DNA of 64,000 bases from Oikopleura dioica (GCA_907165135.1 OU015567.1:1-64000); one strand, 5' to 3'; shown: positions 11,918 to 63,545, counted from the stretch's first letter. Notes: generated from the sequence alone by a model not told the origin. A program made the numbers and translations.

Positions 11918-14900
11918 TCATATTTCAGTTTCAAAGTCTGGAAGAAAAACAAGAACATTTTTCGCATCGGATGATTTGGAAATTTTTTCAGCAATTCTGT
12001 TTCGATAGATGCCTGTAAGATTGTCTTTGAACAGTTTTTAAATTTACAGGGTAAATCATAAAAAGCGCAAACAGTCTTTAGCTCGGGGACAGTTAGTTCG
12101 TACAACGTTCGCTCTTTTGCACTCTAAAGACCGCAAAAAAGAAGTTGTCCGTTTCTCGATTTACGCCAATTCGGATACTCTCTACGAATAGTTTCCTTCA
12201 CTTTTATCTGAAGTTTCGCCCTTGATTCCTCGAGATCAAAGTCCTGATTCATTTTAAAAGAATGAATAACAGAGAGTCTCTTGTTAATTCGTTCAGTTTG
12301 ATAAATATGCCATTTTCAACATAGGTCTCCTCTATGTCGTCTGTATTTTTCCATTTATCATTTAGATGTTCGAAAAAGTCAAGATCATGATTTTCCATTT
12401 TAATTAAAATTGACATGTTTTCCAAATTATTTTCAACTGTAAATTTAGCAATTTTTCGCTCGACAACGGAATCATCAGATCTTTCCCTTCTACGTTTTAG
12501 AGCAACTAACGGATCAATTTCGGGCAATTTATCGTACGATGTCAAATTAACAGAGAGCTCAGAATCAGAACTTGATTTCTCGGAATCAAGCACAATGTCT
12601 GATCTATTTCCTACTTGATTCAAATCAGGTTGTTGATTTCGATAAATTTTTGGTAATGGCATTTCTATCAAAAGAGTCGATGAGGATGAAAAATTATCTG
12701 GTTCTGAAGAAGAACTAGACCGCTCCCGATAAGGTTCCGATTGTAAAGACTGATCTGACATTTCGGAGGATAAAGATTCATGCGCTATTTCCGATTCTTT
12801 TTCTGTAGAGAAATTTTTCGCAAACCGACCAAGGAAATCCCTCGAAAAAAGACAATCTTCGGAGAAAAATTCGAAAAGCTCGAGATCATTTTCTTGTACT
12901 TTTGTCACAATCTTGGGGTATTTTTCAGCATCATTATTCGTCTCATCAGTTAAATTCCGCTGAGAATAACTTTTTATATGCTCTGCATGACGCCGAAATT
13001 CGTCCTTATCATTTTTAACAGTGTACCACAGGCCACTCGGGGATTTAAACGTAACTTCATAAGGACCAATAAATGGAGGGAATTTTTCGCGGAAATTTTT
13101 GATAAGAACTTTATCGCCTAAATTATATTCTTTGAACCGGGGATTATCAAATTTGTTCATTCTTTTTTGTTTTTCTTGTTCAATTTTTGCACGAATTTTC
13201 TCAAAATCAACGTCGATTTTATCTCCGTATGTTCGCCAATTAGGGTCTTGAAAATGATGACTGCTTTTTATACCAGTTTCTACACAAAATGGGGTTGTTC
13301 CGAGTACTGTATGTAGACTACTGTTTATTTCGTGAACAATTTCAAACAGAAAAATATCCCAATTCACCCAATTTGAACGAGCCCTAAGCCTGGCTTTTAT
13401 GGTTCTATTGACGTTTTCAACTTGCCCATTAGATTGGGGATGGCGCGGGGGAATATAATGCACACCAATTTTGTTTTCTTTCAAAAATTTTTCAATCAAA
13501 ACGTGTTCCTTCGCGTTATCTAAAACCATATATTTTGGAAATTTTGGATTTCTAAATAATACGCTTCGAAATTTTTGCAGTAAATAATCCGATTTTTTGC
13601 AAGATAAGGGCTCCGCATAAACTTTTTTGCTGAAACCGTCAATAACCACCATTACATATTTATGACCAAAATCAGTTTCTTGAAGTGGGCCGATTAAATC
13701 GAAGTACAAAATTTCAAAAGGGCCGCTTGGTGTTTCAGATTTACCTAAGGGAGGTTTGTTAGGCTGTAAATTTGGTTTTGAAATTTGACATTTGTGACAT
13801 GATTTAATAAAGCTCGCGACTGTGTTTTTTAATCCCGGCCAAAAATACTTTCTAGAAATTTTCTCGGCTGTTATATCGATTCCAAAATGAGAATGATCAT
13901 GATATTCGCTGCAAATTGTCTCTGTCAAAGCCTCGGGGACGCAAAATCTTTTTTGATATGCTGGAGAGTTTATTGCTAGTTCCCCGGACTCAAGAATTTC
14001 AAGGTCAGGTCTACGTAAAAAATATGGGTAAAGCTCACTAGCTGGGTTATTTGGCCATCTATCAATTTTAACGAAACGTCTTACTTGTGATAATACTCGG
14101 TCAGATTTTTGAAACTCAACAAATGATTCAGGGGTAAACTTTATTTGATTGATTGAACAATTTAATGTATTACGACTAAGGCAATCACTTATTTTCATTT
14201 GATGAGTTTTTCTTTGTTCAATTCGAAATGAAAATCCCTGAAGCTCAGTAAACCATCTTTGAATTTTCAAATTACTTGTCTTGAAAGATTGAGCGTATTT
14301 TACGCAAGAATTATCAGTAATCCAAAGAAAATCGACATAAGCAAGATAAGCTCTCCATCGTTCCATACATGTTTTCCCACTATATAGCTCTTTTTCCAAT
14401 GTCCCGTATTTTTGTTGTGCCGGCGTAAAATTTAGCGAGTGGTAAGCTATCGGTTGCAAGCAATTATGCGAATGATGGTGATCTTTATTTCGCTCCGCGC
14501 AAAGATAAAGAACTCCACCAAGACTATGGTTGGATGCGTCAGTCTCAAGTACAAAAACACCGTTATTTAGTGGGGGGATTTTGAGCTCCAGAGTATTATG
14601 GCAGATGATACTTTTGAGCTTTTCGAGTGAAATCGTCGCCTCTTTTGTCCAACAGAATGAACCTCTGTACGTTTTTGAAATTTCCACTCCCAGGGGTGCA
14701 AAATTTTTAATAAACTTTCTGTGCTGCGAAAGAAGTCCGAAAAGTGATTGTGCCTCCTCTCGGTTTCTTGGAATAGAAAGATTTTTAACCGCTTCGATCT
14801 TGTCCTGTGATGGCCGTATTCTCCCGTTAAAAATTTCAAATCCCAAAATGCATGCTTTTCGCTCAAAAAAACTCGCTTTGTCAATATTTATCCGTAAATT

Positions 14901-16379
14901 ATTTTGATCTAAAATTTGAAAAAATTTAGATAAATTGGCTAGGTGTTCCTCCTCTGTTCTTGAATGGACCACAAGATCGTCAAGATATGCGCAAATTTGA
15001 GTTTTTGGCGTGTCTCGTAAAATAACATCCATGCATTTTGCGAAATGAATAGGGGCATTTTTAAGACCCATGGGAAGCCTTTTCCAAGTAAATTGTCCGT
15101 CTTCAGTCGAAAAAGCTAGTTTTTCTCGCGATTTCTCATCCACGAGACACTGATGAAATCCTTTGCGCAAATCAACGCAAGAAAAAATAAGGCTATTTTC
15201 TAAAAACCCTAAAACATCCTCAATTTGTTGCAGCGGATGATGCTGCTGAAGCGTAAATGAATTTAATTTTCTGTAATCTATACACAGTCTGAATGTACCG
15301 TTTCGTTTTCTTACGAGTAACGCGGGGCTATTATAGGGTGAATTTATTCGCATTATTATGTCTTGACCAAGGTAGGACGTAAGAGTCCCAGTCATTACTC
15401 CCCGCAAAGCATATGGCGTTCTGTACATATTGCTACAAATCGGGCGATCAGTCTCAAGTTCAATCGAAAATTTTTCAAGGTTCGAGACAGGCAAATCATC
15501 GTCCTCGTCTTGAAATAAATGGGTATACACACCAAGAAGATCAAAAAATTTTGGCTGATTGTTTTTCGATACATCGCCTATTTTTAACCGCGAAAGAAGA
15601 AAATTAAGATCTTTTTTTGAGGGCTTTATGCACGCGATCTCAGCTATTTCTGCCAGTTTCGCAAAAGCCGTGCCAGCAGGAATTTTCACTGTAGAATTCA
15701 GGGGATTTATAACAAGAATACGAAAAAATGGAGATTCGGGATCAACTCTCTGAAATGATTCTATTAATTCGAGCTTCGAATTTTTGAGCTGGCTTTTTTC
15801 TAAAAAAAGGTTCATTGATCTGTTCAAATGAGGAATTTTCAAGTCGATTATTTGCTCACTTTTGCCTCTAAATGTGAAATTTTGTTCAGAAACGGCATAA
15901 AAATTGTCTTGCTCAATGTTATTTACTGTTGGGCTTTTTGATGAATTATTACATAAATTTGCCATACGCTCGATAGGACCAGATTTAAATAGACGATTAC
16001 GATGAAGATTGATCATTATTTCATTAGATTTCAGTGCTTCCGAACCGAGAATTGCCTCACAATTGTCATTTACAATATAAAATCGCGATTTACCCCACTT
16101 TTCCGTTTTAACATGAAAATCACATTCAACAAAACCAAGAATTTCAATACTTCCTCCACCATAGTTTTTAGCAAAAATATCAGGGGCTTGAATTTTAACG
16201 TTATCGGGAATAAATGATTTAGGCAAAAGATTAAGTTGGGAACCTGAATCGACGAGCATTTTTATTTTCTTTGAAAAAATTGTCATTTCTACAAAATATT
16301 GTAATCCAATGCGAAAAATTGAACAAGTTCTTGGAACTGGTGCCTGACCAGGGCTTTCAGTTCCATTTACTCGTTTTTT
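11918..16379 (-). CDS. pol: Element B pol polyprotein (PR, DUT-like region, RT, RNaseH, IN, C-terminal extension); frameshifts near the 3' end
   Basis: 1345-aa ORF with LVDSGS, YLDD, LETDAS, HxxxH..CxxC, DDE and GPY; the tail continues in 11866-12105 after apparent 1-nt homopolymer losses. Confidence 0.93.
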
Positions 16380-17472
16380 GAAGTTTCCTCTCCCTCGATC
16401 CGAGCAGCTCTGTAAATTCTATCGGGATTATCGGGACAAGCCGTTTTCATGTGGCCTTTTTTCTGACAAAAGTGGCAGGTAATAAAGGGGCAATGCGATC
16501 TAAAATGAGTGTCTGTGTTACAAAATCCACAAAATCGTCGAGGCCTTGGCCGATACGAATTCGGCGCGCCCAAATTTCGACTTTGAAAATTCCGTTGCTG
16601 GTTATTTTGGCGCGTCAAACTCTGATCGTTGCGGCGATCAACTTCTAATTTTGCAATTGTTGCCGTTAGTTTTTCAATTTGATCATGAAGCGCACACGCC
16701 CGTTTTTCCGCCGCCTCTTCTGATTTTTTCTGTTCAATTTTCAATTGAGAAATTTGGTCCTCGAAGGACATTGTCGATTTCGAAATTAAGTCAGAAGTCG
16801 ACTGAAAAAACGAGCCAAGTTTCGCGTCAATTTCGATTTGGGCAATTTTGGGGATAGTTTCATTACGTTTTCTTTTGTCAAGAAATTTGGATATTTCCTC
16901 GGGGGTTTTTTCAAGCATACACTGATCGCGAAGAAAATTCTGCAGTTCAGGCGTGAGCGATTTTCTAAATTGCGCGTCGATAATGTATTCTCTCGCGTCC
17001 GGTTTTTGCGTTATTTTCTCCGCGACTGTTTTAACACGTGACAAAAAAATCTCGAATTTTTCATTGTTCTCGCTCTTTCGGGCGAGATTTTCCATTTTTC
17101 TTTGTTTCGAAGGATTTTTCCTCGGGCGATTCGTCGCCAAAAACAGACGTCAAAAAGACAATTTTTCCTCAGCTGATTCAAATCCATAAAGATCTTCCCC
17201 GTATTCCCTAAGAAATTCGGGCTCGCATGAATTGTAAACAAAAGAACTTGAAAGGCGCGAAAATTGAGCCTCGAGGTCCTCCTTGTTTTCGGGTTTATTT
17301 TCCGCGAGAGATTTTTCAAAAATCCATTTTGCTCGCTGTAATTTGTCTTTAATTGTGGAATTAATCAAATTAAATTCAAAATTTCTCATTCCTAATCTTA
17401 TCATTTGATTCGGGGAAACAGAAAAAGCGCATGACTCTTGTACAGTACCTCTTCAGGAGTTGGGGTCACCAT
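16367..17472 (-). CDS. gag: Element B gag (two CCHC knuckles), split by frameshifts
   Basis: Pieces 17472-17401, 17404-17150 and 17140-16367; CGFCNTDTHFRSHC and CHFCQKKGHMKTAC; slippery AAAAAAC at 16379-16373. Confidence 0.88.
17458..17471 (-). promoter_or_regulatory. Primer-binding site of B, tRNA-Trp-like (TGGTGACCCCAAC)
   Basis: Directly follows the LTR terminal CA; resembles the complement of the eukaryotic tRNA-Trp 3' end (TGGTGACCCCGAC, from general knowledge; host tRNAs unknown). Confidence 0.7.
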
Positions 17473-18762
17473 GATACGGAAGCGGCTGTCCTGCAAGAAT
17501 TTTGCTCGATCTCTAACTCTAGAATGCCAAGCCAAAACAACGAGAATCAAATTTAAAATTTGCGTGGTTTTATTTGTGATTTGAATGACGGAAAAGGCGC
17601 GACGCGGGGTTAAATAGCAGCGAGATTCGATCAGTGTTTTTGAACAAGCGGTTGTTTTTGAAAAACAATTTTTCTTTCGAAAACAAGGAAGAGAGCCCGT
17701 GGCTTCTTTTAGCGGTTTTTCTTGCGGGAAATCCTTTCGGATCGATTTCTTTTCGGAAGAGGAGCTGGTCGAACTAGCCAAGCAAGTTATTTTCAAAGGT
17801 TTCGGGAGCCGGCGCCGCGCGTGACGAGATAAAACGCAAATTAATTATTTTTTCATAATAAAAGCAGAAAATAATAACAGCCACTTAAACTTCTCACTAT
17901 GTGACCGTAGAAGTGACTGTTAATTATGATTGAAATAAATAAAGGATGAGAAAAGTAAAAGAATATATACAAAATTTTAACAAATAAATTGAATAAAATT
18001 TGGTCAGGATTTTATAAAATAAATTTATCAAAATTGAAATCATAGAAGAAGCAAATTCCAAGGAACATACCCGGGGGAAGTTACTGTCGCGGTTCGCACC
18101 GTATCTTCTCTTACGGATGAGCTAGTTTGCGACAAGCGGACGCACTGACAGAGAGTTTGTCCGACCCCACGGCACCGAGATGATACGACGGTTTATCTGC
18201 TCGTTGGAGTTGTTGTTGTTGAAGAAGGTGTTGACGGCTGTTCTGTTGTAGACTTTGAATCGTATGTACTGTCAATAATCGAACTTTAAAATCGCAAAGC
18301 AATGATAAGAAATATCAATAAATAGATTAAACATGCGGTTTTGCGAATTGCATATTTTTGATGAATTGACGTCAGATCGCACTAGAATAGTCAGAAACGA
18401 ATTAAGATTTCTTCCAAAGTATGCGTACATACACATTAATCCTAGACTGAATAAACCCTTAATTAGTTTCCGACCCGTTGATTATGATGAGAGCATATGA
18501 GCATTCCAATGATAAAAATAGAAATCGTAAAGAGATGACATGATGATAAGACAATTTTGGGTCAATCTGGCTCGTAAAAACTGACCATCTTTTCATTTTG
18601 AGAAGAATATCGTGAAATGATTTTTGAAAAAATGTCTGATCAATTTGGTGATACCAAGCTGACAAGACAAATTTAAACCAACGTAGAACCGAATTGACGT
18701 AAATACTTGGCCGTGAAATAAATTTTTTGTGTTGCTTGAGGCGTTGTTCCCTAAGGATATCA
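17472..18762 (-). repeat. Element B 5' LTR
   Basis: Direct repeat of 10580-11868; visible differences are homopolymer lengths. Confidence 0.96.
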
Positions 18763-18767
18763 GTCAC

Positions 18768-19215
18768 ACTGTCAAGCCGCACAAAGCGGAACTCAGCTAG
18801 AGGATGAATTTATCATGCAACAGCTTCGTAGTAGTTGAAGAAGAATACCAGTTGAATAGTCCAATTGTCGAGAAGATGTCGTCGATTGAAATCATAGAAG
18901 AGTCAGCTTGATTCATCAAATAATATTTACCAGAGCAGAATATTGAAAATAAATTGTAAGCACTAGAATTTTTTAACAAAAACCGCCGAAACGGGTGGCT
19001 AATGTGCCTTTTGTGAGTGTGAAATAACGCCTACGTTATGAAGGAAAAATAGAGATTTTATGAACTCATGCATTATCCGAGATTTGGCTCCAAAATCATC
19101 AGAACAATTTTATCGTGAATTTCATGCTTGATCAACCTAATTGGCGTAAAATTATTTGTGAGAGATAAATTCAATTTTTATTTTTTTGTCTTAGTTCTTT
19201 CCCGTATTCGTATCA
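18768..19215 (-). repeat. Element A 5' LTR, upstream (U3) part
   Basis: Starts TGATACGAATACGGG on the minus strand; homologous to the first 450 bp of the D LTR; joins 10579 across the GTCAC TSD. Confidence 0.88.
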
Positions 19216-20243
19216 TTGACCTCGTTTTTGGCGATTCATGATAACGATGACCATCGAAAATATATTTTTTGGGTTTTTTCTGTTGGGTTTGAGAGGCTCA
19301 GACTCAACCAAAATAACGCTCGGAAGACGGCAAAAACGCTGCAAATAAAATAAGGGCAAAAACGAACTTTCAAAATTTTGACCTCGTTTTTGGGCGATTC
19401 ATGATAACGATGACCATCGAAAAAAATTTTTTGAATTTTTTTTCTGTTGAGTTTGAGAGGCTCAGAATCAACCAAAATGACGCTCGGAAGACGGCAGAAA
19501 CGCTGCAAATAAAATAAGGGCAAAAAACGAATTTTCAAAATTTAGACCTCGTTTTTGGGCGATTCATGATAACGATGACCATCGAAAAAAAATTTTTTTT
19601 TTTTGAATTTTTTTTCTGTTTGGTTTGAGAGGCTAAGAATCAACCAAAATGACGCTCGGAAGAAGGCAGAAACGTTGCAAATAAAATTAGAGCAAAAAAC
19701 GAATTTCAAAATATTGATCTCATTTTTGGGCGATTCATGATAACGATGAGCATCGAAAAAAAAATTTTTTTTTGATTTTTTTTCTGTTGGGTTTGAGAGG
19801 CTCAGAATCAACAAAAATGACGCTCGGAAGACGGCAGAAACGCTGCAAATAAAATAAGGGCAAAAAACGAAATTTCAAAATTTTGACCTCGTTTTTGGGC
19901 GATTCATGATAACGATGACCATCGAAAAAAAAATTTTTTTTTTTTGAATTTTTTTTCTGTTGGGTTTGAGAGGCTCAGAATCAACCAAAATGACGCTCGG
20001 AAGACGACAAAAACGCTGCAAATAAAATTAGAGCAAAAAACGAATTTTCAAAATTTTGACCTCATTTTTGGGCGATTCATGATAACGATGACCATCGAAA
20101 AAAAAATTTTTTTTTTGATTTTTTTTCTGTTGGGTTTGAGAGGCTCAGAATCAACCAAAATGACGCTCGGAAGACGGCAAAAACGCTGCAAATAAAATAA
20201 GGGCAAAAACGAACTTTCAAAATTTTGACCTCGTTTTTGGGCG
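19216..20243. repeat. Subtelomeric satellite, ~160-172 bp monomer (block 1)
   Basis: Tandem monomers GGGCGATTCATGATAACGATGACCATCG-A(n)T(n)-GAATTTTTTCTGTTGGGTTTGAGAGGCTCAGAATCAACCAAAATGACGCTCGGAAGACGGCAGAAACGCTGCAAATAAAA...TTCAAAATTTTGACCTCGTTTTT. Confidence 0.97.
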
Positions 20244-21316
20244 TGATAAGAATAGCGGAAAAGAACATAAAAATAAAAATTGAATCTTCCACTCACGGCC
20301 AGAATTTCGCCAATTAGGTTGATTTTGCATGAAAATCACTTGTTAAACGGACTGAAGATTTATGGAGCCAAATCTTTGGAAAGCATGAGTTCATCAAAAT
20401 CTATATTTCTCATTCATAACGTACGCGTTATTTCACATTCTCTGAAGGCACCTTAGCCACCCGTTTCGGCGGTTTTCTTTAATCTTTCTAGTGTTCAGTT
20501 TGTTCTCCTATATTTTCTGACTGGTAATTATTTTTGATGAAACAATTCTTCTCTTTCTTGATATCAACAACGATTCGGACTGCTTTGGAAATGCATTATT
20601 CTGCTCATAGGAAAATACTTCAATTGGCTCTCTTCTATGATTTCAACGGAGCTGTTGCATGAAATTCATCCTCTAGCTGAGTTCCGCTAACGCGGCTTGA
20701 CACTGTGACCCCGTGATCCTCGGGATGGCGGTGTCTGTAAGTGCTCCTAGGTAGGCAAAATCGATTGAACACTTTTCTGGCTCGCTTCAGGATTACTGAC
20801 CATTCTCCTCAAACCGACAGAACTGCAGCGTCAACGATGGCGGCGACTTCTCCAGCTACTACAACGACGACAACGACAACGCAATGGACTGACAATGATT
20901 ATGGAAATGGACTTGGACAAAGTAAAATAAAAATTGATAAAGAATTCTATCAAGAGTGATATGGCCACATAGTGGGAAGTTGATCTCTTGATATGATTTG
21001 AATTTGAAATTAATCAAGAAAAAAAAAAAAGATTATTACGAGCGTGGCGATTGCGGAAAATTTGATGTAACGAAAATAACAATTGGCGCGAAAGCGCCGC
21101 GTCATTATTGGAAACAACAACAAAAGCGCGAAATGCGCGAAACGCCTTATTTGGAAATATTTGCACCTGCCAAAAATTGCAAATCTGAAAATTTTGAATT
21201 TGAATTTCACTCTCTTCATAACCAAAATAATAAAAGCCACGTTTCGTATTTTGAAGCCTCATCCTTAGCAAGACGCAGTTAGATTAGAGAGTCAGTAATT
21301 AGAGTTATCTGCATCA
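20244..21316 (+). repeat. D1 5' LTR (~1.07 kb)
   Basis: TGATA...GCATCA; about five substitutions versus the 3' LTR. Confidence 0.96.
20664..20755 (+). ncRNA. Putative conserved three-way-junction cis-RNA motif (D copy; also 27473-27564, 29496-29587, 36300-36391)
   Basis: P1 CTAG-ct-GAG/CTC-CTAG, P2 CCGC/GCGG, P3 GACAC/GTGTC, junction GTAAGTG, then AG|GTAGG; compensatory changes in the other families. Confidence 0.7.
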
Positions 21317-22367: not shown

Positions 22368-22405
22368 CTTTCGGGACAAATTCTGGTCAAATTTCAATCC
22401 CGAAA
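22358..22405 (+). promoter_or_regulatory. -1 ribosomal frameshift signal (A AAA AAC plus hairpin)
   Basis: Slippery heptamer 22358-22364 before the gag stop; stem TTTCGGGA/TCCCGAAA; pol opens in the -1 frame. Equivalent sites in A, B, E and F. Confidence 0.8.
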
Positions 22406-26977: not shown

Positions 26978-27051
26978 GATTCAATAGTTCTTTTTCGAAA
27001 AAAGAAGCTCCAAAAATAGAAAATTTAAAAGATACCCACAACGGGTCATAC

Positions 27052-28124
27052 TGATAAGAATAGCGGAAAAGAACATAAAAAATAAAAATTGAATCTTCCA
27101 CTCACGGCCAGAATTTCGCCAATTAGGTTGATTTTGCATGAAAATCACTTGTTAAACGGACTGAAGATTTATGGAGCCAAATCTTTGGAAAGCATGAGTT
27201 CATCAAAATCTATATTTCTCATTCATAACGTACGCGTTATTTCACATTCTCTGAAGGCACCTTAGCCACCCGTTTCGGCGGTTTTCTTTAATCTTTCTAG
27301 TGTTCAGTTTGTTCTCCTATATTTTCTGACTGGTAATTATTTTTGATGAAATAATTCTTCTCTTTCTTGATATCAACAACGATTCGGACTGCTTTGGAAA
27401 TGCATTATTCTGCTCATAGGAAAATACTTCAATTGGCTCTCTTCTATGATTTCAACGGAGCTGTTGCATGAAATTCATCCTCTAGCTGAGTTCCGCTAAC
27501 GCGGCTTGACACTGTGACCCCGTGATCCTCGGGATGGCGGTGTCTGTAAGTGCTCCTAGGTAGGCAAAATCGATTGAACACTTTTCTGGCTCGCTTCAGG
27601 ATTACTGACCATTCTCCTCAAACCGACAGAACTGCAGCTTCAACGATGGCGGCGACTTCTCCAGCTACTACAACGACGACAACGACAACGCAATGGACTG
27701 ACAATGATTATGGAAATGGACTTGGACAAAGTAAAATAAAAATTGATTAAGAATTCTATCAAGAGTGATATGGCCACATAGTGGGAAGTTGATCTCTTGA
27801 TATGATTTTAATTTGAAATTAATCAAGAAAAAAAAAAAGATTATTACGAGCGTGGCGATTGCGGAAAATTTGATGTAACGAAAAAAACAATTGGCGCGAA
27901 AGCGCCGCGTCATTATTGGAAACAACAACAAAAGCGCGAAATGCGCGAAACGCCTTATTTGGAAATATTTGCACCTGCCAAAAATTGCAAATCTGAAAAT
28001 TTTGAATTTGAATTTCACTCTCTTCATAACCAAAATAATAAAAGCCACGTTTCGTATTTTGAAGCCTCATCCTTAGCAAGACGCAGTTAGATTAGAGAGT
28101 CAGTAATTAGAGTTATCTGCATCA
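27052..28124 (+). repeat. D1 3' LTR
   Basis: Direct repeat of 20244-21316. Confidence 0.96.
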
Positions 28125-29075: not shown

Positions 29076-30141
29076 TGATAAGAATAGCGGAAAAGAACAT
29101 AAAAATAAAAATTGAATCTTCCACTCACGGCCAGAATTTCGCCAATTAGGTTGATTTTGCATGAAAATCACTTGTTAAACGGACTGAAGATTTATGGAGC
29201 CAAATCTTTGGAAAGCATGAGTTCATCAAAATCTATATTTCTCATTCATAACGTACGCGTTATTTCACATTCTCTGAAGGCACCTTAGCCACCCGTTTCG
29301 GCGGTTTTCTTTAATCTTTCTAGTGTTCAGTTTGTTCTCCTATATTTTCTGACTGGTAATTATTTTTGATGAAACAATTCTTCTCTTTCTTGATATCAAC
29401 AACGATTCGGACTGCTTTGGAAATGCATTATTCTGCTCATAGGAAAATACTTCAATTGGCTCTCTTCTATGATTTCAACGGAGCTGTTGCATGAAATTCA
29501 TCCTCTAGCTGAGTTCCGCTAACGCGGCTTGACACTGTGACCCCGTGATCCTCGGGATGGCGGTGTCTGTAAGTGCTCCTAGGTAGGCAAAATCGATTGA
29601 ACACTTTTCTGGCTCGCTTCAGGATTACTGACCATTCTCCTCAAACCGACAGAACTGCAGCGTCAACGATGGCGGCGACTTCTCCAGCTACTACAACGAC
29701 GACAACGACAACGCAATGGACTGACAATGATTATGGAAATGGACTTGGACAAAGTAAAATAAAAATTGATAAAGAATTCTATCAAGAGTGATATGGCCAC
29801 ATAGTGGGAAGTTGATCTCTTGATATGATTTGAATTTGAAATTAATCAAGAAAAAAGATTATTACGAGCGTGGCGATTGCGGAAAATTTGATGTAACGAA
29901 AATAACAATTGGCGCGAAAGCGCCGCGTCATTATTGGAAACAACAACAAAAGCGCGAAATGCGCGAAACGCCTTATTTGGAAATATTTGCACCTGCCAAA
30001 AATTGCAAATCTGAAAATTTTGAATTTGAATTTCACTCTCTTCATAACCAAAATAATAAAAGCCACGTTTCGTATTTTGAAGCCTCATCCTTAGCAAGAC
30101 GCAGTTAGATTAGAGAGTCAGTAATTAGAGTTATCTGCATC

Positions 30142-35804: not shown

Positions 35805-36946
35805 GATTCAATAGTTCTTTTTCGAAAAAAGAAGCTCCAAAAATAGAAAATTTAAAAGATACCCACAACGGGTCATACTGATAAGAATAGCGGAAAAGAA
35901 CATAAAAAATAAAAATTGAATCTTCCACTCACGGCCAGAATTTCGCCAATTAGGTTGATTTTGCATGAAAATCACTTGTTAAACGGACTGAAGATTTATG
36001 GAGCCAAATCTTTGGAAAGCATGAGTTCATCAAAATCTATATTTCTCATTCATAACGTACGCGTTATTTCACATTCTCTGAAGGCACCTTAGCCACCCGT
36101 TTCGGCGGTTTTCTTTAATCTTTCTAGTGTTCAGTTTGTTCTCCTATATTTTCTGACTGGTAATTATTTTTGATGAAATAATTCTTCTCTTTCTTGATAT
36201 CAACAACGATTCGGACTGCTTTGGAAATGCATTATTCTGCTCATAGGAAAATACTTCAATTGGCTCTCTTCTATGATTTCAACGGAGCTGTTGCATGAAA
36301 TTCATCCTCTAGCTGAGTTCCGCTAACGCGGCTTGACACTGTGACCCCGTGATCCTCGGGATGGCGGTGTCTGTAAGTGCTCCTAGGTAGGCAAAATCGA
36401 TTGAACACTTTTCTGGCTCGCTTCAGGATTACTGACCATTCTCCTCAAACCGACAGAACTGCAGCTTCAACGATGGCGGCGACTTCTCCAGCTACTACAA
36501 CGACGACAACGACAACGCAATGGACTGACAATGATTATGGAAATGGACTTGGACAAAGTAAAATAAAAATTGATTAAGAATTCTATCAAGAGTGATATGG
36601 CCACATAGTGGGAAGTTGATCTCTTGATATGATTTTAATTTGAAATTAATCAAGAAAAAAAGATTATTACGAGCGTGGCGATTGCGGAAAATTTGATGTA
36701 ACGAAAAAACAATTGGCGCGAAAGCGCCGCGTCATTATTGGAAACAACAACAAAAGCGCGAAATGCGCGAAACGCCTTATTTGGAAATATTTGCACCTGC
36801 CAAAAATTGCAAATCTGAAAATTTTGAATTTGAATTTCACTCTCTTCATAACCAAAATAATAAAAGCCACGTTTCGTATTTTGAAGCCTCATCCTTAGCA
36901 AGACGCAGTTAGATTAGAGAGTCAGTAATTAGAGTTATCTGCATCA

Positions 36947-38410: not shown

Positions 38411-40080
38411 TGATACCAAATCTCTGGTTTTTCTGATTGCAATTAAAATATAACTAATCAAATTAATTTTTCTGCAATAAAATTTGATCAAAATTTTTGC
38501 TTTTACGGTTATTTGTTTATTCGAGGAATGAGGGAAATTTGGCGGTGAGCGAAAATGCAAAAATTATGCAGCTGCATTTTCCAAATAAGAAAACAATATT
38601 GCACGCGCGGAAAGCATGGTTTTTCAAAACACAGAGTTCACAAGTTCGTCCCAGTTTTCTTCCGGATAATCATTAGCGATCTTTTCAGATCAAATTCTTT
38701 CGCATGAGCCGGGTTCTCAGGCTTTTTCTTTTCGCTTCAGGAGACGAACAGTGAAGGGATGAATTATGTCGCGGAAAGCGGCGCCAAATTTCGCATAAAT
38801 AAAATAAAGAAAGATTAATAAAAGTTAAGGAAAGCAAGGTAAAATAATCTATAATAATAATTGGCCAGAAATTAAAATTATAAATTTACAGAAAAGATAA
38901 TAAAAAGTAAATAAAATAGTTTCTCATTTTTTTGTTATTTTTTTTTTTGATTTTTTTTTCAATTATGTTTGCATAAAATACAGTTAAATAAAGTGTAATG
39001 ATTAATTTAAATTACAGAAAAATTTATAAAGTCAAAACTACTTCGGCTCACCTTGCAGTGCTTATTGACGCCTTTTGCTTCACTCGCTACTTTGCGTCAA
39101 GCCCTATCGTTGACAGGGAACCGCAAGATGCCAAGTATCTGCAGCTTGAAGCTTGCCATCCGGCGCGCCCATGGGTGCCATTTGAAGTAGAATTGAAGAG
39201 TTGGCGAGGTGGTAGAACTCGCGTCCGCGCCGATAGCAGCAGTCGAAGATTTTCCAAATTGAACAGAATAAGATAAACCCACTAGCTAGAAATTAAGAAC
39301 AAATTAACCCTCGAACACTAAGGGCTTTTACAGAGCAAAGACACCTAATTTAAACTAGGAAAGAAACGATCCAAGCAACATTTTTTCAATTTCAAATAAA
39401 ATTAACCCTCGAACATGCGGGACTTTTCATGCATAAACAAGAACGATAAGAGTAATTTTAGAAATCATAAATGAAAATTAACCCTCGAACACTTAGGTTA
39501 AGTTAGAATCAAGAATTTTAATAAAATGAACCCTCGAACACAAGGGTTTCCATGCAACCAAATGTTTTGTTCCGAGCAATATATCGATCATGCTAATTTT
39601 TAACAAGCGAATTTGAAGTATTTTAGTAGATAAATTCGGGATTAAGCGGTTATTTTTGATAACGCTTCTAAATAAATTTTCAATAATAATTGTACAGAGG
39701 TTATATGTGCACGCGTACGTACTGTTAAGCCTAGACTTTAACCGCTTAATTTAAACCCTAACCAGAAGAATTGAAGAGTTCGGCCGCTCGCTGACTTTAG
39801 AGGTCTGCCGAGGTTCTAGCTCCGATGCAGACATAAAGCCGCGAGAAGACCTTTTACCAGTGATGAGATGAAATTTGGGACCGTGAAGAGACGTTTTTTG
39901 GATTGTGAAGAGTCTCTTTTGAACCGCAAGGAGACTCTTTTGGGCGGAAATTTCGACGCCATCTTTTCAAAATTTTTGGTGTGAATTCGGGCTGTATTTT
40001 GAAGCTTAGTTTGAGTTCAATTTCACCGTGAAGATTATCAGAAGATTTTTTTTTTCGGCATTTTCTGTAGTATTGTATCA
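38411..40080 (-). repeat. E 3' LTR
   Basis: TGATA/TATCA termini; direct repeat of 46352-48021. Confidence 0.96.
39041..39155 (-). ncRNA. Three-way-junction motif, E copy (also 46982-47096)
   Basis: Sense strand: ATCTTGCGG-TT-CCCTGTC(AAC)GATAGGG-CT-TGACGC...GCGTCA-ATAAGCA-CTGCAAG|GTGAG. Confidence 0.68.
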
Positions 40081-40227
40081 CTGTGACCACTTATGGGTCC
40101 GGAACTATTTTTCTTCCATTCTTTTTTGTCAGTGATACAATTATTTTTTCCTACAGAAGAAAATTTTTTAATATAAGCTTGGCTAATTGAACTCAAGCCT
40201 CAAACTACAATTGATACTATTTCTATT

Positions 40228-46352: not shown

Positions 46353-48021
46353 GATACCAAATCTCTGGTTTTTCTGATTGCAATTAAAATATAACTAATC
46401 AAATTAATTTTTCTGCAATAAAATTTGATCAAAATTTTTGCTTTTACGGTTATTTGTTTATTCGAGGAATGAGGGAAATTTGGCGGTGAGCGAAAATGCA
46501 AAAATTATGCAGCTGCATTTTCCAAATAAGAAAACAATATTGCACGCGCGGAAAGCATGGTTTTTCAAAACACAGAGTTCACAAGTTCGTCCCAGTTTTC
46601 TTCCGGATAATCATTAGCGATCTTTTCAGATCAAATTCTTTCGCATGAGCCGGGTTCTCAGGCTTTTTCTTTTCGCTTCAGGAGACGAACAGTGAAGGGA
46701 TGAATTATGTCGCGGAAAGCGGCGCCAAATTTCGCATAAATAAAATAAAGAAAGATTAATAAAAGTTAAGGAAAGCAAGGTAAAATAATCTATAATAATA
46801 ATTGGCCAGAAATTAAAATTATAAATTTACAGAAAAGATAATAAAAAGTAAATAAAATAGTTTCTCATTTTTTTGTTATTTTTTTTTTTGATTTTTTTTT
46901 CAATTATGTTTGCATAAAATACAGTTAAATAAAGTGTAATGATTAATTTAAATTACAGAAAAATTTATAAAGTCAAAACTACTTCGGCTCACCTTGCAGT
47001 GCTTATTGACGCCTTTTGCTTCACTCGCTACTTTGCGTCAAGCCCTATCGTTGACAGGGAACCGCAAGATGCCAAGTATCTGCAGCTTGAAGCTTGCCAT
47101 CCGGCGCGCCCATGGGTGCCATTTGAAGTAGAATTGAAGAGTTGGCGAGGTGGTAGAACTCGCGTCCGCGCCGATAGCAGCAGTCGAAGATTTTCCAAAT
47201 TGAACAGAATAAGATAAACCCACTAGCTAGAAATTAAGAACAAATTAACCCTCGAACACTAAGGGCTTTTACAGAGCAAAGACACCTAATTTAAACTAGG
47301 AAAGAAACGATCCAAGCAACATTTTTTCAATTTCAAATAAAATTAACCCTCGAACATGCGGGACTTTTCATGCATAAACAAGAACGATAAGAGTAATTTT
47401 AGAAATCATAAATGAAAATTAACCCTCGAACACTTAGGTTAAGTTAGAATCAAGAATTTTAATAAAATGAACCCTCGAACACAAGGGTTTCCATGCAACC
47501 AAATGTTTTGTTCCGAGCAATATATCGATCATGCTAATTTTTAACAAGCGAATTTGAAGTATTTTAGTAGATAAATTCGGGATTAAGCGGTTATTTTTGA
47601 TAACGCTTCTAAATAAATTTTCAATAATAATTGTACAGAGGTTATATGTGCACGCGTACGTACTGTTAAGCCTAGACTTTAACCGCTTAATTTAAACCCT
47701 AACCAGAAGAATTGAAGAGTTCGGCCGCTCGCTGACTTTAGAGGTCTGCCGAGGTTCTAGCTCCGATGCAGACATAAAGCCGCGAGAAGACCTTTTACCA
47801 GTGATGAGATGAAATTTGGGACCGTGAAGAGACGTTTTTGGATTGTGAAGAGTCTCTTTTGAACCGCAAGGAGACTCTTTTGGGCGGAAATTTCGACGCC
47901 ATCTTTTCAAAATTTTTGGTGTGAATTCGGGCTGTATTTTGAAGCTTAGTTTGAGTTCAATTTCACCGTGAAGATTATCAGAAGATTTTTTTTTTTCGGC
48001 ATTTTCTGTAGTATTGTATCA
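46352..48021 (-). repeat. E 5' LTR
   Basis: Direct repeat of 38411-40080; only homopolymer differences seen. Confidence 0.96.
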
Positions 48022-48928: not shown

Positions 48929-49970
48929 TAATATCGATACGGCAGAAGAACATAAAAATAAAAATTGAATTATCCTACAATCACGGCCAAATTACGCTAA
49001 CTCGGATAGATTTTTGAATCTTTCACAAATCGAATGTAAAACTTGAAATCTTGAGCCGATTTCATGAATCGCCAGCATGAGTTCATCATAATCCCTCTTA
49101 TTCTCTGTAGCGTACGCGCTATTTTACTTCATTTAAGGCACATTAGCCAACCGTCTTCGGGCGTTAAAATCTCACTCTTTTAGATACGCATGAATATTCA
49201 ACCCTTTTCTATTGGAAACAACTCTCAATTCATTTTAGTTCTAAATTCTCTTTCTAGTTCAAATTAATCCCTTCTTATTTTGCTGTTTAAAACGATTCTC
49301 AAGCTTCAACCTGGAAAAGCTAAAAAACGATGGATTCTTCCTTGATTTCACCCTGGACCATTTGTATGAATATTCATCCCCAGCTGAGTTCCGCTTTTGC
49401 GGCTTGACAGTGTGACCCCGTGCTCCGCGGGATGGCGCTGTCAGTAACTGCTCCTGGTAGGCGTTTTTGTTTGAACCCTTTTTGGCTCGATTAAGGACGA
49501 ATGGCTATCATCTTTAAAAACGACAAAACTGCACGTTCTACAACGACGACAACTGCTCCATCAACGAAAACGACAACGAACGGACTGACAACGATTTTGG
49601 ACATGGACTAATAACGGCTTCTTATCAAAAGTGATACGGCAACATAGTTGGAAGTTGATCTTTTGATAAGTCAAAATGATGATATGGGAATCGGCTGCTT
49701 CTTGCGTAACAATCACTGCGGCGAAAATGAAGAAAACAACGAGAAAAACAAGAGCGCGAAATGCGCCGCGCAAAATCAAAACATCCGCGAAATACTTGGC
49801 GAAATGCCCTTATTTGGAAATTTTACCATCTGCGCGGAATTGAAATTTGAAAATTTGAAATTCGAAAATCATTCTCGATCTTACCAAATAAAATAGCGTC
49901 GATTCCTGAATTTTTAATTGTTTCCTTTGCAAGTTGCAGATTAGCTTAGAGAATCATCCCTTTCGGTATC
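48929..49970 (+). mobile_element. G1: solo LTR related to the A/D LTRs, termini degraded
   Basis: Shares U3 boxes, the RNA motif (49372-49461) and the TAGCTTAGAGA...TCGGTATC end with A/D; no internal coding region; starts TAATA and lacks the terminal A and right TSD. Confidence 0.85.
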
Positions 49971-51452: not shown

Positions 51453-53309
51453 TTATATCGATACGGCAGAAGAACATAAAAAATGAAAATTGAATTATCC
51501 TTCAATCACGGCCAAATTACGCTAACTCGGATAGATTTTTGAATCTTTCACAAATCGAATGTAAAACTTGAAATCTTGAGCCGATTTCATGAATCGCCAG
51601 CATGAGTTCATCATAATCCCTCTTATTCTCTGTAGCGTACGCGCTATTTTACTTCATTTAAGGCACATTAGCCAACCGTCTTCGGGCGTTAAAATCTCAC
51701 TCTTTTAGATACGCATGAATATTCAACCCTTTTCTATTGGAAACAACTCTCAATTCATTTTAGTTCTAAATTCTCTTTCTAGTTCAAATTAATCCCTTCT
51801 TATTTTGCTGTTTAAAACGATTCTCAAGCTTCAACCTGGAAAAGCTAAAAAACGATGGATTCTTCCTTGATTTCACCCTGGACCATTTGTATGAATATTC
51901 ATCCCCAGCTGAGTTCCGCTTTTGCGGCTTGACAGTGTGACCCCGTGCTCCGCGGGATGGCGCTGTCAGTAACTGCTCCTGGTAGGCGTTTTTGTTTGAA
52001 CCCTTTTTTGGCTCGATTAAGGACGAATGGCTATCATCTTTAAAAACGACAAAACTGCACGTTCTACAACGACGACAACTGCTCCATCAACGAAAACGAC
52101 AACGAACGGACTGACAACGATTTTGGACATAGACTGATAACGGCTTCTTATCAAAAGTGATACGGCAACATAGTTGGAAGTTGATCTTTTGATAAGTCAA
52201 AATGATGATATGGGAATCGGCTGCTTCTTGCGTAACAATCACTGCGGCGAAAATGAAGAAAACAACGAGAAAAACAAGAGCGCGAAATGCGCCGCGCAAA
52301 ATCAAAACATCCGCGAAATACTTGGCGAAATGCCCTTATTTGGAAATTTTACCATCTGCGCGGAATTGAAATTTGAAAATTTGAAATTCGAAAATCATTC
52401 TCGATCTTACCAAATAAAATAGCGTCGATTCCTGAATTTTTAATTGTTTCCTTTGCAAGTTGCAGATTAGCTTAGAGAATCATCTGATACAATACTGAAG
52501 AAAAAGAGAGAAAAAAAAAAAATTTTTTTTTGATTAATTTTCACGGTGAAATTAAACTCAAAATAAGTCGCAGAGTACTTCCCAAAGTCACATAAAAATT
52601 TGGAAAAGATGGCGTTGAATATTCCGCCCAAAATCTTCTACTCACGGCCAAAATTATCATCATCACTGGTAAAAGGTCTTCTTGCTCTTTTATGTCTGTA
52701 TCGGAGCTAGAACCTCTGCAGACCTCTAAAATAAGCGAGCGGCCGACTGCTTTATCTAAAGCTCTGGTTAGGGGTAAAAATAAGCGGTAAATACTTAGGC
52801 TTGTCAGTACGTACGCGTGCATATAAAACTTCTGTTCAATTATTATTCGAAACATTTATAATTTGATTCAAAACTAACCGCTTAATTTCCGAATTCTCTA
52901 CTAATATACTCTCCGAATTTGCATGTTCAAAATTAGCATGATCGTTCATTTATCGCTCGAAAATTATAGATCTGACTTGCATGAAAGCTCTAGTGTTCTA
53001 GGGTTAATTTTATTTTAATTCCTGACACTTTATTAAATTCTTCCAAAATTGCTTGCTGTTAAATTTAACCCGACTGATCCAGGGTTAAATTTATTTTAAA
53101 AATTCATTATTTCTTATTTCACTCGAGTGTTCGAGGATTAACTTGCTCTTGATTATAAGCTGTGGCTTTTTCTGTTCGATAAATTGGAAATCAATGATGA
53201 TTGCTTACGACGCGGATGCGAGTTCTACCACCTCGCCAACCCTTCAAAATTAGCTTCTAATGGCACCCATGGGCGGGCCGGATGGCAAGCTTCAATGCTG
53301 CAGATACTT

Positions 53310-53400
53310 GGGCATCTTGCGGTTCCCTGTCATCGATAGGGCTTGACGCAAAGTAGCGAGGCAAAGCAAACCGCGTCAGTAACTACTGCAAGGTGAGCCG
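53310..53400 (+). ncRNA. Three-way-junction motif, F copy (also 61138-61228)
   Basis: ATCTTGCGG-TT-CCCTGTC(ATC)GATAGGG-CT-TGACGC...GCGTCA-GTAACTA-CTGCAAG|GTGAG. Confidence 0.7.
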
Positions 53401-60169: not shown

Positions 60170-61907
60170 ATTAGATAAATTAAAAAGTATTCTGCGGTTT
60201 GAGTTTAATTAGCCACGCTTTGTCTTTAAGATTTCTTCAGGAAAAAATAATTGTTATAACTGACAAAAAAAGATCGGAAGAAAAATAGTTCCGGACCCAT
60301 AAGTGGTCACAGTGATACAATACTGAAGAAAAAGAGAGAAAAAAAAAAAATTTTTTTTTGATTAATTTTCACGGTGAAATTAAACTCAAAATAAGTCGCA
60401 GAGTACTTCCCAAAGTCACATAAAAATTTGGAAAAGATGGCGTTGAATATTCCGCCCAAAATCTTCTACTCACGGCCAAAATTATCATCATCACTGGTAA
60501 AAGGTCTTCTTGCTATTTTATGTCTGTATCGGAGCTAGAACCTCTGCAGACCTCTAAAATAAGCGAGCGGCCGACTGCTTTATCTAAAGCTCTGGTTAGG
60601 GGTAAAAATAAGCGGTAAATACTTAGGCTTGTCAGTACGTACGCGTGCATATAAAACTTCTGTTCAATTATTATTCGAAACATTTATAATTTGATTCAAA
60701 ACTAACCGCTTAATTTCCGAATTCTCTACTAATATACTCTCCGAATTTGCATGTTCAAAATTAGCATGATCGTTCATTTATCGCTCGAAAATTATAGATC
60801 TGACTTGCATGAAAGCTCTAGTGTTCTAGGGTTAATTTTATTTTAATTCCTGACACTTTATTAAATTCTTCCAAAATTGCTTGCTGTTAAATTTAACCCG
60901 ACTGATCCAGGGTTAAATTTATTTTAAAAATTCATTATTTCTTATTTCACTCGAGTGTTCGAGGATTAACTTGCTCTTGATTATAAGCTGTGGCTTTTTC
61001 TGTTCGATAAATTGGAAATCAATGATGATTGCTTACGACGCGGATGCGAGTTCTACCACCTCGCCAACCCTTCAAAATTAGCTTCTAATGGCACCCATGG
61101 GCGGGCCGGATGGCAAGCTTCAATGCTGCAGATACTTGGGCATCTTGCGGTTCCCTGTCATCGATAGGGCTTGACGCAAAGTAGCGAGGCAAAGCAAACC
61201 GCGTCAGTAACTACTGCAAGGTGAGCCGAAGTTAATTTTTCCCTATAATTTTTTCTGTAAATAGTATTCTTTTATCGTTAATTTTAAATGCTTTTAACTG
61301 TTTATTTATGCTCCTTTTTATTATTTTCACGAAAAAAATGATAGATAATTTTTTCAAAAAAAATATATACATTTATTCACTTACTTTTATCTTTTTCTGT
61401 AAATTAATAATTTTAATTACTGGCCAATTATTATTATTATTTATCAAACCGATTGTATTTAAAAAAAAAAAATTTTAAAATTTATTCTTTTTATCTGCGA
61501 ATCTGTGCGACGCTTTCCGCGAAAATTGTTTCTTCATCCCTTCACCTGTTCGCCTCCCGAGACGAAAACCAATGCCCGAGAACCCGGCTCGAGCGAAAAG
61601 AAATAGACTTGAAAAGGTCGAGAAATGTTTAACCGGATGGAACTCTGGCGAACTTGTGAACTTATTGTTTTTAAAAAATCACGCTTTGTGCGCGTGCGCT
61701 ATTGTTAAAATTGTTTATGAAATGCAGCTGCGCTTTTCTGCATCTTTTTGCGCTTGCAATTTTTGCTCACTCTCAAAATAAACGAAAAACCGCGAAAGTA
61801 AAAAATTAAATTTTCAAATTTTCTTGCAGGAAAATTAATTAAATTAGAAAAATTTTAATTGCAATCAGAAGAATTAGAGCATTTGTATCATCATCCCTTT
61901 CGGTATC

Positions 61908-63238: not shown

Positions 63239-63545
63239 TGATACGGAAGCGGCTGTCCTGCAATTTATGCGCGTTCTCTAACTCTAGAATGCCAAGCTAA
63301 AAATGACGAGAATCAAATTTTTTAATTTGCGTGGTTTTATTTGTGATTTGAATGAGAAAAAGAAGCACGGCGCGCGGTTAAATACGGCGAGATTGAATCA
63401 ATGTTTTTGAACGAGCGGTTGTTTTTGAGCTTTTGAAAAGCTTTTGTTTTTGAAATCAAGGAAGAAAGCCCAAGGCCATCAAAGCAGTTTTTCTTTCGGG
63501 AAATCCTTACGGATCGTATTCTTGCCGATTTAGAGCTGAGCTTGT
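63239..63545 (-). mobile_element. H1: U5 end of a B-related LTR (minus), interrupted
   Basis: TGATACGGAAGCGGCTGTCCTGCAA... is a diverged match to 10580-10880. Confidence 0.85.

What the first reader, a model, noticed from the sequence alone, without database searches (positions are those of the whole stretch)
20664..20755. Unrecognised covarying three-way-junction RNA motif in every LTR family
LTRs of the three lineages are otherwise unalignable by eye, yet each has P1-G-T(T)-C-P2-G-CT-TG-P3-RTAASYN-C-P1'. P1: CTAG..GAG/CTC.CTAG (D), CCAG..GAG/CTC.CTGG (G), ATCTTGCGG/CTGCAAGGT (E, F), CCG.GGGG/CCCC.CGG (B). P2: CCGC/GCGG, CCCTGTC/GATAGGG, CGGAC/GTCCG. P3: GACAC/GTGTC (D), GACAG/CTGTC (A, G), TGACGC/GCGTCA (E, F), TGTCGC/GCGACA (B). 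Junctions GCTTG and TAA are invariant while stems and loops vary freely, the pattern of a ligand-binding or catalytic core. It does not match hammerhead, HDV-like, twister, pistol or hatchet cores as I recall them. P1' covers the splice donor, suggesting a splicing/packaging switch or a new self-cleaving RNA. Copies: 11173-11280, 18063-18171, 10530-10579 plus 18768-18810, 39041-39155, 49372-49461, 53310-53400.
Basis: partly seen in the sequence, partly recalled or inferred. Interest (0 to 1): 0.88.

Follow-up and report, generated by a model that had tools for sequence, protein, structure and literature searches.

The report
Conserved three-way-junction RNA in LTRs
Every intact long terminal repeat of the Ty3/gypsy-type retroelements in this subtelomeric window carries, on the element's sense strand, the same 80-110-base three-helix RNA fold ending at a splice-donor-like GU; it is real, conserved and matches no catalogued RNA family, but nothing shows it is a ribozyme or a ligand sensor.

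Summary
Twelve intact LTRs have exactly one copy each, and a thirteenth, interrupted LTR has it in two pieces. All copies lie mid-LTR on the element's sense strand. Each lineage folds on its own into the same three-way junction. A model built from one lineage alone finds the second lineage as its best outside hit. A structural descriptor hits only these 12 places, against 0.007-0.03 hits per shuffled window. In four distinct sequences all cells pair, and 7 of 24 pairs changed on both sides. The motif is the best-conserved stretch of the LTR within two lineages. Support is weaker for the third lineage and for helix P1 in longer context.

No Rfam family and no tRNA matches, so it is not a known ribozyme class.

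A G|GU-purine-N-G sequence sits at the 3' foot of P1 in all lineages. LTR landmarks suggest the usual promoter lies about 400-550 nt downstream, which would put the motif in U3 rather than the leader.

My best reading, at 0.35 confidence, is a cis-acting RNA element that controls access to that donor-like site. Catalysis and ligand binding have no support.

The parts
20668..20758 (+). P1 to P1' spans 20673-20750.
27477..27567 (+). Motif copy, 3' LTR of element 20244-28124
29500..29590 (+). Motif copy, 5' LTR of element 29076-36946 (tandem duplicate of the previous element)
36304..36394 (+). Motif copy, 3' LTR of element 29076-36946
49376..49464 (+).
51901..51989 (+). Motif copy in the second solo LTR, starting at 51453
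53311..53400 (+). Motif copy, 5' LTR (52485-54062) of element 52485-61890 (lineage 2)
61139..61228 (+). Motif copy, 3' LTR of element 52485-61890
39044..39132 (-). Motif copy, 3' LTR (38411-40080) of the minus-strand element 38411-48021 (lineage 2)
46985..47073 (-). Motif copy, 5' LTR (46352-48021) of element 38411-48021
11171..11284 (-). Motif copy, 3' LTR (10580-11868) of the minus-strand element 10580-18762 (lineage 3). Weak model score but the same fold and junction letters.
18063..18177 (-). Motif copy, 5' LTR (17472-18762) of element 10580-18762
10049..19226 (-). Its motif copy lies in two pieces on either side of the nested element. The pieces were compared apart and not joined.
20751..20756 (+). 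Splice-donor-like GU-purine-N-G directly after P1'. The same feature is present in all lineages, and in some the G or GU is itself paired in P1.
20965..20975 (+). Second small conserved hairpin (4-bp stem, AUA loop) about 200 nt 3' of the motif. Shared by lineages 1 and 3, with two compensatory changes.
21146..21157 (+). 12-base box shared by lineages 1 and 2, always about 160-180 nt before the LTR's 3' end. Possible core-promoter element.
21229..21234 (+). AATAAA about 85 nt before the LTR end. One is present at 70-115 nt before the LTR end in every lineage.
20244..21316 (+). The LTR that holds the finding (TGATA...CATCA). It is followed by the primer-binding site, and the gag ATG is formed at the LTR/PBS junction.

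Best explanation
It is a cis-acting structured RNA element of one clade of Ty3/gypsy-type LTR retroelements, read from the element's sense strand. Two local hairpins (P2, P3) are closed by a helix (P1), and the 3' strand of P1 ends at, or includes, a 5'-splice-site-like G|GU-purine-N-G.

I infer that forming or opening P1 hides or exposes that site to U1 snRNP or the spliceosome. That would decide whether the full-length RNA stays unprocessed or is processed.

Shown: the fold, its strand, its conservation and the donor-like sequence.
Inferred: that the GU is a used or bound 5' splice site, and that P1 controls it.
Unsettled: whether the motif lies in a long R/leader or in U3 (the 3' untranslated part of the full-length RNA). 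The LTR landmarks favour U3.
For: - The same three-way junction appears in five independent folds.
- It is detected across lineages.
- There is one hit per LTR and none elsewhere.
- All 80 cells pair, 7 of 24 pairs changed on both sides, and slid controls pair at 35-50%.
- There are 2-5 G.U pairs per copy, and the sense fold is more stable than the antisense fold in 4 of 5 families. Both point to sense-strand RNA.
- It is the best-conserved LTR segment: 85-90% against a 66% mean in lineage 1, and 95% against 70% in lineage 2.
- GU with a purine at +3 and G at +5 follows P1' in all three lineages. From base composition I estimate about 1 in 100 per lineage by chance.
- In lineages 2 and 3 the GU itself is base-paired in P1.
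- In lineages 2 and 3 the donor-like site is followed by 150-280 nt of very A+T-rich, poorly conserved, intron-like sequence.
- A pyrimidine-rich stretch ending in GCAG lies 20-70 nt before the end of every LTR.
Against: - There is no transcript evidence, so no splice junction is shown.
- The elements have no env-like gene. The pol C-terminal extension has no hydrophobic segment and no Pfam match, so no subgenomic mRNA is obviously needed.
- A shared 12-mer box about 170 nt from the LTR end, an AATAAA 70-80 nt after it, a gag ATG at the LTR/PBS junction and an ATG-free final 166-384 nt fit a standard promoter, R and U5 in the last 170 nt. That would put the motif in U3, where a working donor is unexpected.
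- No acceptor is conserved at the end of the A+T-rich stretch in lineage 2.
- P1 is predicted to be outcompeted in longer context in lineages 1 and 3.
- There are only three independent lineages.
Confidence: 0.35

Rival explanations
1. It is a structured cis element with no role in splicing: a recognition site on the full-length RNA for the element's own Gag or RT, or for a host factor (packaging, dimerisation, nuclear export, or 3'-end formation if it lies in U3). The GU-containing tail would simply be part of the binding surface.
For: - The fold is conserved and is the strongest constraint in the LTR.
- The likely U3 position matches where export or response elements of some retroviruses lie (general knowledge).
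- Gag has a CCHC knuckle.
- There is no env-like gene.
Against: It does not explain why a good donor-like hexamer is kept at the same structural position in three lineages whose stems share no sequence. The loops, the usual protein-contact sites, are not conserved.
Confidence: 0.25
2. It is the body or first exon of a separate transcript made from an upstream start inside the LTR: a small non-coding RNA, or a leader exon spliced to the acceptor-like site near the LTR end. That transcript would be made in addition to the standard transcript.
For: - In lineage 2 the 100 nt upstream of the motif are 82-95% conserved and rich in DNA palindromes.
- There are T runs 6-45 nt after P1'.
- An acceptor-like Y-rich stretch ending in GCAG lies 20-70 nt before the gag ATG in all lineages.
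- The unspliced stretch between them holds many ATGs, while the motif has none in lineages 2 and 3.
Against: - T runs are expected by chance in 64% A+T sequence.
- No conserved TATA-like box lies upstream of the motif.
- In lineage 1, conservation starts only about 30 nt upstream of the motif.
- No Rfam small-RNA family matches.
Confidence: 0.1
3. It is a self-cleaving ribozyme of a new class, or a ligand-sensing junction.
For: It is a three-way junction with a few letters invariant across lineages while the stems change. Ribozymes are known in other retroelements, such as the hammerheads in LTRs of plant retrozymes (PMC4918200). No known family matches.
Against: - Invariance rests on three lineages.
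- Part of the 'junction' pairs as an extension of P3.
- No known ribozyme model scores, even at E<=10.
- An LTR element has its own promoter and poly(A) signal and needs no RNA-end-making ribozyme. Cleavage inside U3 or R would cut the full-length RNA.
Confidence: 0.05
4. It is a DNA-level regulatory element, or a chance by-eye pattern, with no RNA structure under selection.
For: It lies in an LTR region rich in palindromes. Few lineages are available. The alignment used for pair counts was fitted to the structure.
Against: - Compensatory changes, including a U-A, U.G, C-G series at one P1 position within lineage 1.
- G.U pairs that would be A.C mismatches on the other strand.
- One hit per LTR and none in shuffles.
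- Cross-lineage model detection.
Confidence: 0.05

Closest known systems
Splice-donor stem-loop and three-way-junction packaging core of retroviral 5' leaders (described for HIV-1 in PMC4974535 and PMC7395439)
   Same: A conserved RNA fold in a retroelement that places the major donor in or at the foot of a helix. A three-way junction in which donor residues can be sequestered. The idea that structure tunes the choice between splicing and keeping full-length RNA.
   Different: There is no sequence or model similarity: no Rfam retroviral family hit. Here the motif is inside the LTR, probably in U3 and 400-550 nt upstream of the likely start site, not downstream of the primer-binding site. The elements have no env-like gene. 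I fetched no retroviral sequence for comparison, so the likeness is one of architecture only.
Hammerhead ribozymes in the LTRs of plant retrozymes (PMC4918200, PMC9695139)
   Same: A small three-way-junction RNA motif carried in both LTRs of an LTR-type retroelement, on the sense strand.
   Different: The hammerhead models do not match. Retrozymes are small, non-coding and non-autonomous. These elements are 8-10 kb with gag and pol. No evidence of cleavage or circular RNA exists here.
Export/response elements in the U3-R part of the 3' LTR of some retroviruses, and constitutive transport elements (general knowledge; not tested here)
   Same: Structured RNA in the 3' untranslated part of the full-length RNA, conserved within a lineage and acting in cis.
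   Different: Those elements are larger and serve RNAs that keep introns. No homology was tested or found, and the donor-like GU has no counterpart there.

Membership tests
Hammerhead ribozyme (Rfam hammerhead models) | Match to the family covariance models (core letters in the three junction strands) | tested here: not met
   No hit at the gathering threshold in the whole window. No hit at E<=10 with lax filters around a copy of each lineage.
Hammerhead ribozyme | Three helices around a junction | tested here: met
   Three-way junction in all folds. This feature alone does not define the family.
Hammerhead ribozyme | Site-specific self-cleavage | not testable with these tools
   No RNA data are available.
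HDV-like, twister, twister-sister, pistol, hatchet and hairpin ribozymes | Match to the Rfam covariance models | tested here: not met
   none listed, even at E<=10
Known retroviral/retroelement cis-RNA families in Rfam (packaging, donor, primer-binding-site elements) | Match to the Rfam covariance models | tested here: not met
tRNA or tRNA-like gene | Cloverleaf detected by ARAGORN | tested here: not met
   0 genes in the window
Spliceosomal snRNA / spliced-leader RNA | Match to Rfam snRNA or SL RNA models | tested here: not met
LTR retrozyme | Small non-coding LTR element with a hammerhead in each LTR | tested here: not met
   The elements encode gag and pol. There is no hammerhead.
Ty3/gypsy (Metaviridae-type) LTR retroelement (the carrier of the motif) | Pol domain order protease, RT, RNase H, integrase; Gag with a CCHC knuckle | tested here: met
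   Pfam hits
Ty3/gypsy LTR retroelement | Direct LTRs with TG...CA ends, 5-bp target duplication, primer-binding site after the 5' LTR | tested here: met
   LTR pairs 99.3-99.9% identical. TGATA...TATCA ends and 5-bp duplications. TGG-starting site after each 5' LTR.
Functional 5' splice site | GU with a consensus-like context | tested here: met
   G|GU-purine-N-G in all lineages
Functional 5' splice site | Observed exon junction in RNA, with a matching acceptor | not testable with these tools
   No transcript data are available. Only acceptor-like sequences were noted.

The most novel reading that the evidence does not exclude
The junction is a new small functional RNA class carried by LTR retroelements. 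It could be a self-cleaving RNA, or a structured decoy or gate for U1 snRNP placed in U3. In the boldest version its donor pairs with the acceptor-like site in U5, so that read-through or back-spliced forms of the element's RNA arise.
Probability: 0.07. Interest if true: 0.85.

Novelty: new member of a known kind. Interest (0 to 1): 0.45.

Why it matters
Conserved RNA structures are well mapped in a few retroviruses and yeast elements, but hardly at all in the very large Ty3/gypsy group of invertebrate-type genomes. This is a compact fold that is the most constrained part of the LTR, survives complete turnover of its stem sequences, and ends at a donor-like site. It is therefore a good handle on how such elements control processing of their full-length RNA. 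It is also a useful marker for annotating this clade's LTRs. If the motif does lie in U3, a conserved donor-like site there would be unusual and worth explaining.

Tried and rejected
- Known-family search: Rfam at the gathering threshold on the whole window and at E<=10 on three copies gave only chance-level hits to unrelated families. ARAGORN found nothing.
- Plain MAFFT of the five families aligned the junction letters but not the 5' helices. I therefore used model-based alignment. I discarded alignment A4 for counting because two of its rows ran into the nested element.
- Cross-lineage BLAST of whole LTRs does not pick out the motif. This confirms that the likeness is structural.
- Coding explanations: there is no shared ORF in the LTRs. 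The ATG after the motif in one family is not conserved.
- Env-like gene as a reason for a donor: rejected. No hydrophobic segment and no Pfam match in the pol C-terminal extension.
- A short conserved intron directly after the motif in lineage 1: rejected. The aligned AG is preceded by C, A or G in the three families.
- Pol III gene idea: the T runs after the motif are not more than chance in this composition.
- Long-range pairing of the motif with the U5/PBS region: the script timed out and I did not repeat it.
- Failed calls: an empty script, a structure string one character too long and a search term with a slash.

Full report
**What the window is.** Bases 1-4830 are a (CCCTAA)n telomere tract. 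The rest (about 36% G+C) is an array of a 163-173-bp satellite into which LTR retroelements have inserted. Pfam shows protease, RT, RNase H and integrase in that order, and a CCHC Gag, so these are Ty3/gypsy-type elements. I do not take the contig for human. It carries long open gypsy-type gag-pol frames, and the closest protein relatives are unnamed proteins on 6-7 kb metagenome contigs at 42-65% identity. The best named hits are arthropod and mollusc proteins at about 27-35% identity. The host is unknown but is probably an invertebrate animal.

**Elements and lineages (bounds).**
- Lineage 1 has three families.
- Lineage 2 is 38411-48021 (minus strand) and 52485-61890 (plus strand, inserted near the end of the second solo LTR).
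- Lineage 3 is 10580-18762 (minus strand, the nested element).
- All LTRs start TGATA and end TATCA or CATCA, and have 5-bp target duplications.

**Observation check.** The sequence at 20664-20755 is as described. Every intact LTR has one copy, always on the sense strand of its element and always mid-LTR. Sense offsets are about 425 of 1073, 448 of about 1040, 585 of 1291, 949 of 1670 and 827 of 1578. Folded in isolation, one copy of each of five families gives the same architecture: closing helix P1, short hairpin P2 and long hairpin P3. Energy z-scores range from -0.3 to -3.4 (trimmed cores). MAFFT finds GCTTG and TAA invariant.

I compared the interrupted copy as two separate pieces. The 5' piece has the P1 5' strand, P2 and the anchor. 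The 3' piece has the distal P3 hairpin, the TAA junction, P1' and the GU. I did not cut out the nested element or join the pieces. At one P1 position the three lineage 1 families show U-A, U.G and C-G.

**Is it more than chance?**
1. Covariance model R1 was built only from the two intact lineage 1 families. Searched with filters off over 59 kb on both strands, its best non-self hits are the lineage 2 copies, at the right place and strand (18.2 bits, E about 0.008; 14.2 bits, E about 0.1).
2. Model R2, built from lineages 1 and 2, finds the lineage 3 copies as its best new hits, but only at noise level (13.2 bits, E 0.16; 11 bits, E 0.75). By this test the third lineage is suggestive, not proven.
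3. On the four distinct sequences of lineages 1 and 2, all 80 cells form standard pairs and 7 of 24 pairs changed on both sides. With partners slid by 1-3 columns, only 35-50% of cells pair and 0-1 pairs change on both sides. That alignment was fitted to the structure and so leans towards it.
4. A simple descriptor (the 5-letter anchor, TAA three bases after P3, at least 4 bp in P2, at least 5 bp in P3, at least 6 bp in P1 with one bulge) hits exactly the 12 intact copies and nothing else. Shuffled windows give 0.007-0.03 hits. I wrote the descriptor after seeing the data, so this is a rough figure.
5. LTRs of different lineages are otherwise not alignable. Within lineages the motif is the best-conserved LTR stretch: 85-90% against a 66% mean, and 95% against 70%.
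6. Each copy has 2-5 G.U pairs, and the sense fold is more stable than the antisense fold in four of five families. The structure therefore belongs to the sense strand.

**Weak points.**
- There are only three independent lineages.
- P1 is kept with high probability in a 300-500 nt context only in lineage 2. P2 and P3 persist everywhere.
- Part of the 'invariant junction' (UUG with CAG or CAA) pairs as an extension of P3 in most copies, so the truly unpaired junction is short.

**Known families.** Rfam 15 gives nothing at the gathering threshold in the window. It gives nothing relevant at E<=10 with lax filters around a copy of each lineage. ARAGORN finds no tRNA-like gene. So the motif is not a hammerhead, HDV-like, twister, twister-sister, pistol, hatchet or hairpin ribozyme, not an snRNA or spliced-leader RNA, and not a catalogued retroviral element. 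Full-text searches found HIV-1 donor and three-way-junction papers and the plant retrozyme literature, but nothing describing this motif.

**What surrounds it.** Directly after P1' every lineage has G|GU, a purine at +3 and G at +5. In lineages 2 and 3 the GU is itself paired in P1, and in lineage 2 a further short helix covers the next bases. From the window's base composition I estimate about 1 in 100 per lineage for such a hexamer at that position. This is my own calculation, not a tool result.

In lineages 2 and 3 the next 150-280 nt are very A+T-rich and poorly conserved, which looks intron-like. In lineage 1 the next 160 nt are 76% conserved but not coding. A small hairpin (4-bp stem, AUA loop) about 160-200 nt downstream is shared by lineages 1 and 3 with two compensatory changes.

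Nearer the 3' end of the LTR there are four more landmarks:
- A 12-base box is shared by lineages 1 and 2, always about 160-180 nt before the LTR end. There are 10 matches, all on the sense strand, against 1.8 expected.
- Every lineage has an AATAAA 70-115 nt before the LTR end.
- Every lineage has a pyrimidine-rich stretch ending in GCAG 20-70 nt before the LTR end.
- The gag ATG is formed by the last base of the LTR and the TGG of the primer-binding site in the three full-length families checked in lineages 1 and 2; the lineage 3 element has the same junction ATG, but it does not open its gag frame.

The last 166-384 nt of each LTR are free of ATG. This is modest evidence, because runs of similar length occur elsewhere in the LTRs.

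**Where the motif sits in the transcript.** There are two layouts.
- Layout (i): a standard promoter, R and U5 lie in the last 170 nt of the LTR. The motif is then in U3, is transcribed only in the 3' untranslated part of the full-length RNA, and lies 400-550 nt upstream of the start site.
- Layout (ii): transcription starts just 5' of P1, R is about 560-650 nt long, and the motif is the first leader structure. The donor-like site would then be used with the acceptor-like site near the LTR end, removing many upstream ATGs.

The box, the AATAAA spacing and the ATG-free tail favour (i). The donor-like and acceptor-like pair favours (ii). I put (i) at about 0.6. Sequence alone cannot settle it.

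**Mechanism.** My best-supported reading (0.35) is a cis-acting RNA element whose closing helix gates a 5'-splice-site-like sequence. The fold, strand, conservation and hexamer are shown. Use of the site and the gating are inferred.

Rivals:
- A recognition element for packaging, export or 3'-end formation without splicing (0.25).
- A separate LTR-internal transcript or leader exon (0.1).
- A new ribozyme or ligand sensor (0.05).
- A DNA-level element or chance (0.05).

The elements have no env-like gene. The 400-660-residue pol extension beyond integrase has no hydrophobic segment and no Pfam match. This weakens the simple 'major donor for a subgenomic mRNA' version.

**State of the elements' genes (counts only, from open-frame chains; approximate).**
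- 38411-48021: gag and pol each uninterrupted.
- 20244-28124: gag open; pol in one frame with two in-frame stops.
- 29076-36946: gag shortened with at least one frame change; pol with two in-frame stops and one frameshift.
- 52485-61890: gag with at least one frame change near its start; pol with one in-frame stop.
- 10580-18762: pol open; gag region split over three open stretches (at least two frame changes).
- The telomere-capped element: pol with one in-frame stop and one frameshift. It has lost its 3' part to the telomere and carries one nested insertion in its 5' LTR.

- That step is referred. It is also the main route to a larger covariation test.
- The two covariance models are profiles of a 91-position non-coding motif.
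- None was entered into a tool, a note or this report, and no conclusion rests on them.

**Verdict.** This is a real, conserved, so far uncatalogued structured RNA motif of one clade of LTR retroelements. It is a new member of the known kind 'cis-acting RNA structures of retroelements'. Its function is unproven, and its probable U3 position next to a conserved donor-like site is unusual. The catalytic and ligand-binding reading is not supported by anything found here.

Noticed in passing
window 1-4831: About 800 CCCTAA repeats abut the broken-off pol of a minus-strand gypsy-type element with no 3' LTR. The chromosome end appears to have been capped inside the element. The listed 908-aa ORF at 4629-7355 runs on into the telomere repeats.
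   Followed up: partly
window 19216-20243, 28125-29075, 36947-38410, 48024-48928, 49968-51452, 61905-63243: A 163-173-bp satellite flanks every element. Insertions are at different positions of the monomer (target duplications GGGCG and GACAG), so there is no single target site. The whole region is a satellite array colonised by LTR elements.
   Followed up: partly
window 19660-28510 vs 28509-37323: An 8.85-kb tandem duplication (99.5% identity) of satellite plus a whole element. The two element copies differ in how their genes are interrupted.
   Followed up: partly
window 20965-20975; also near 49640, 10320 (-) and 11005 (-): A second small conserved hairpin (4-bp stem, AUA loop, followed by a shared purine-rich tail) about 160-200 nt 3' of the motif. 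It occurs in lineages 1 and 3 with two compensatory changes and was not found in lineage 2.
   Followed up: partly
window 21146-21157 and nine other sites: A 12-base box shared by otherwise unalignable LTR lineages 1 and 2 at a fixed distance (about 160-180 nt) from the LTR end, 70-80 nt before an AATAAA. It is a candidate core-promoter or poly(A) upstream element.
   Followed up: partly
LTR/PBS junctions at 21316, 46352, 54062 and 17472: The last A of the LTR and the TGG of the primer-binding site form an ATG at all four junctions. It opens gag in three of the four full-length families, so the whole 5' untranslated region would lie inside the LTR. All lineages share the first 7-8 bases of the primer-binding site, so they probably use the same primer tRNA.
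   Followed up: partly
window 40231-42135 (-), 12252-13409 (-), 58229-60166 (+), 26111-26974 (+): Pol continues for 290-660 residues beyond the integrase core, with no Pfam match above chance and no hydrophobic segment. This is an uncharacterised C-terminal domain of this clade.
   Followed up: partly
window 63239-63830: Two LTR fragments related to the lineage 3 LTR (81% and 93% identity) lie in opposite orientations next to each other. The second may begin another element that runs off the window.
   Followed up: no
window 10137-10242: A 41-bp unit repeated 2.6 times inside the LTR of the telomere-capped element. It duplicates the 12-base box region.
   Followed up: no
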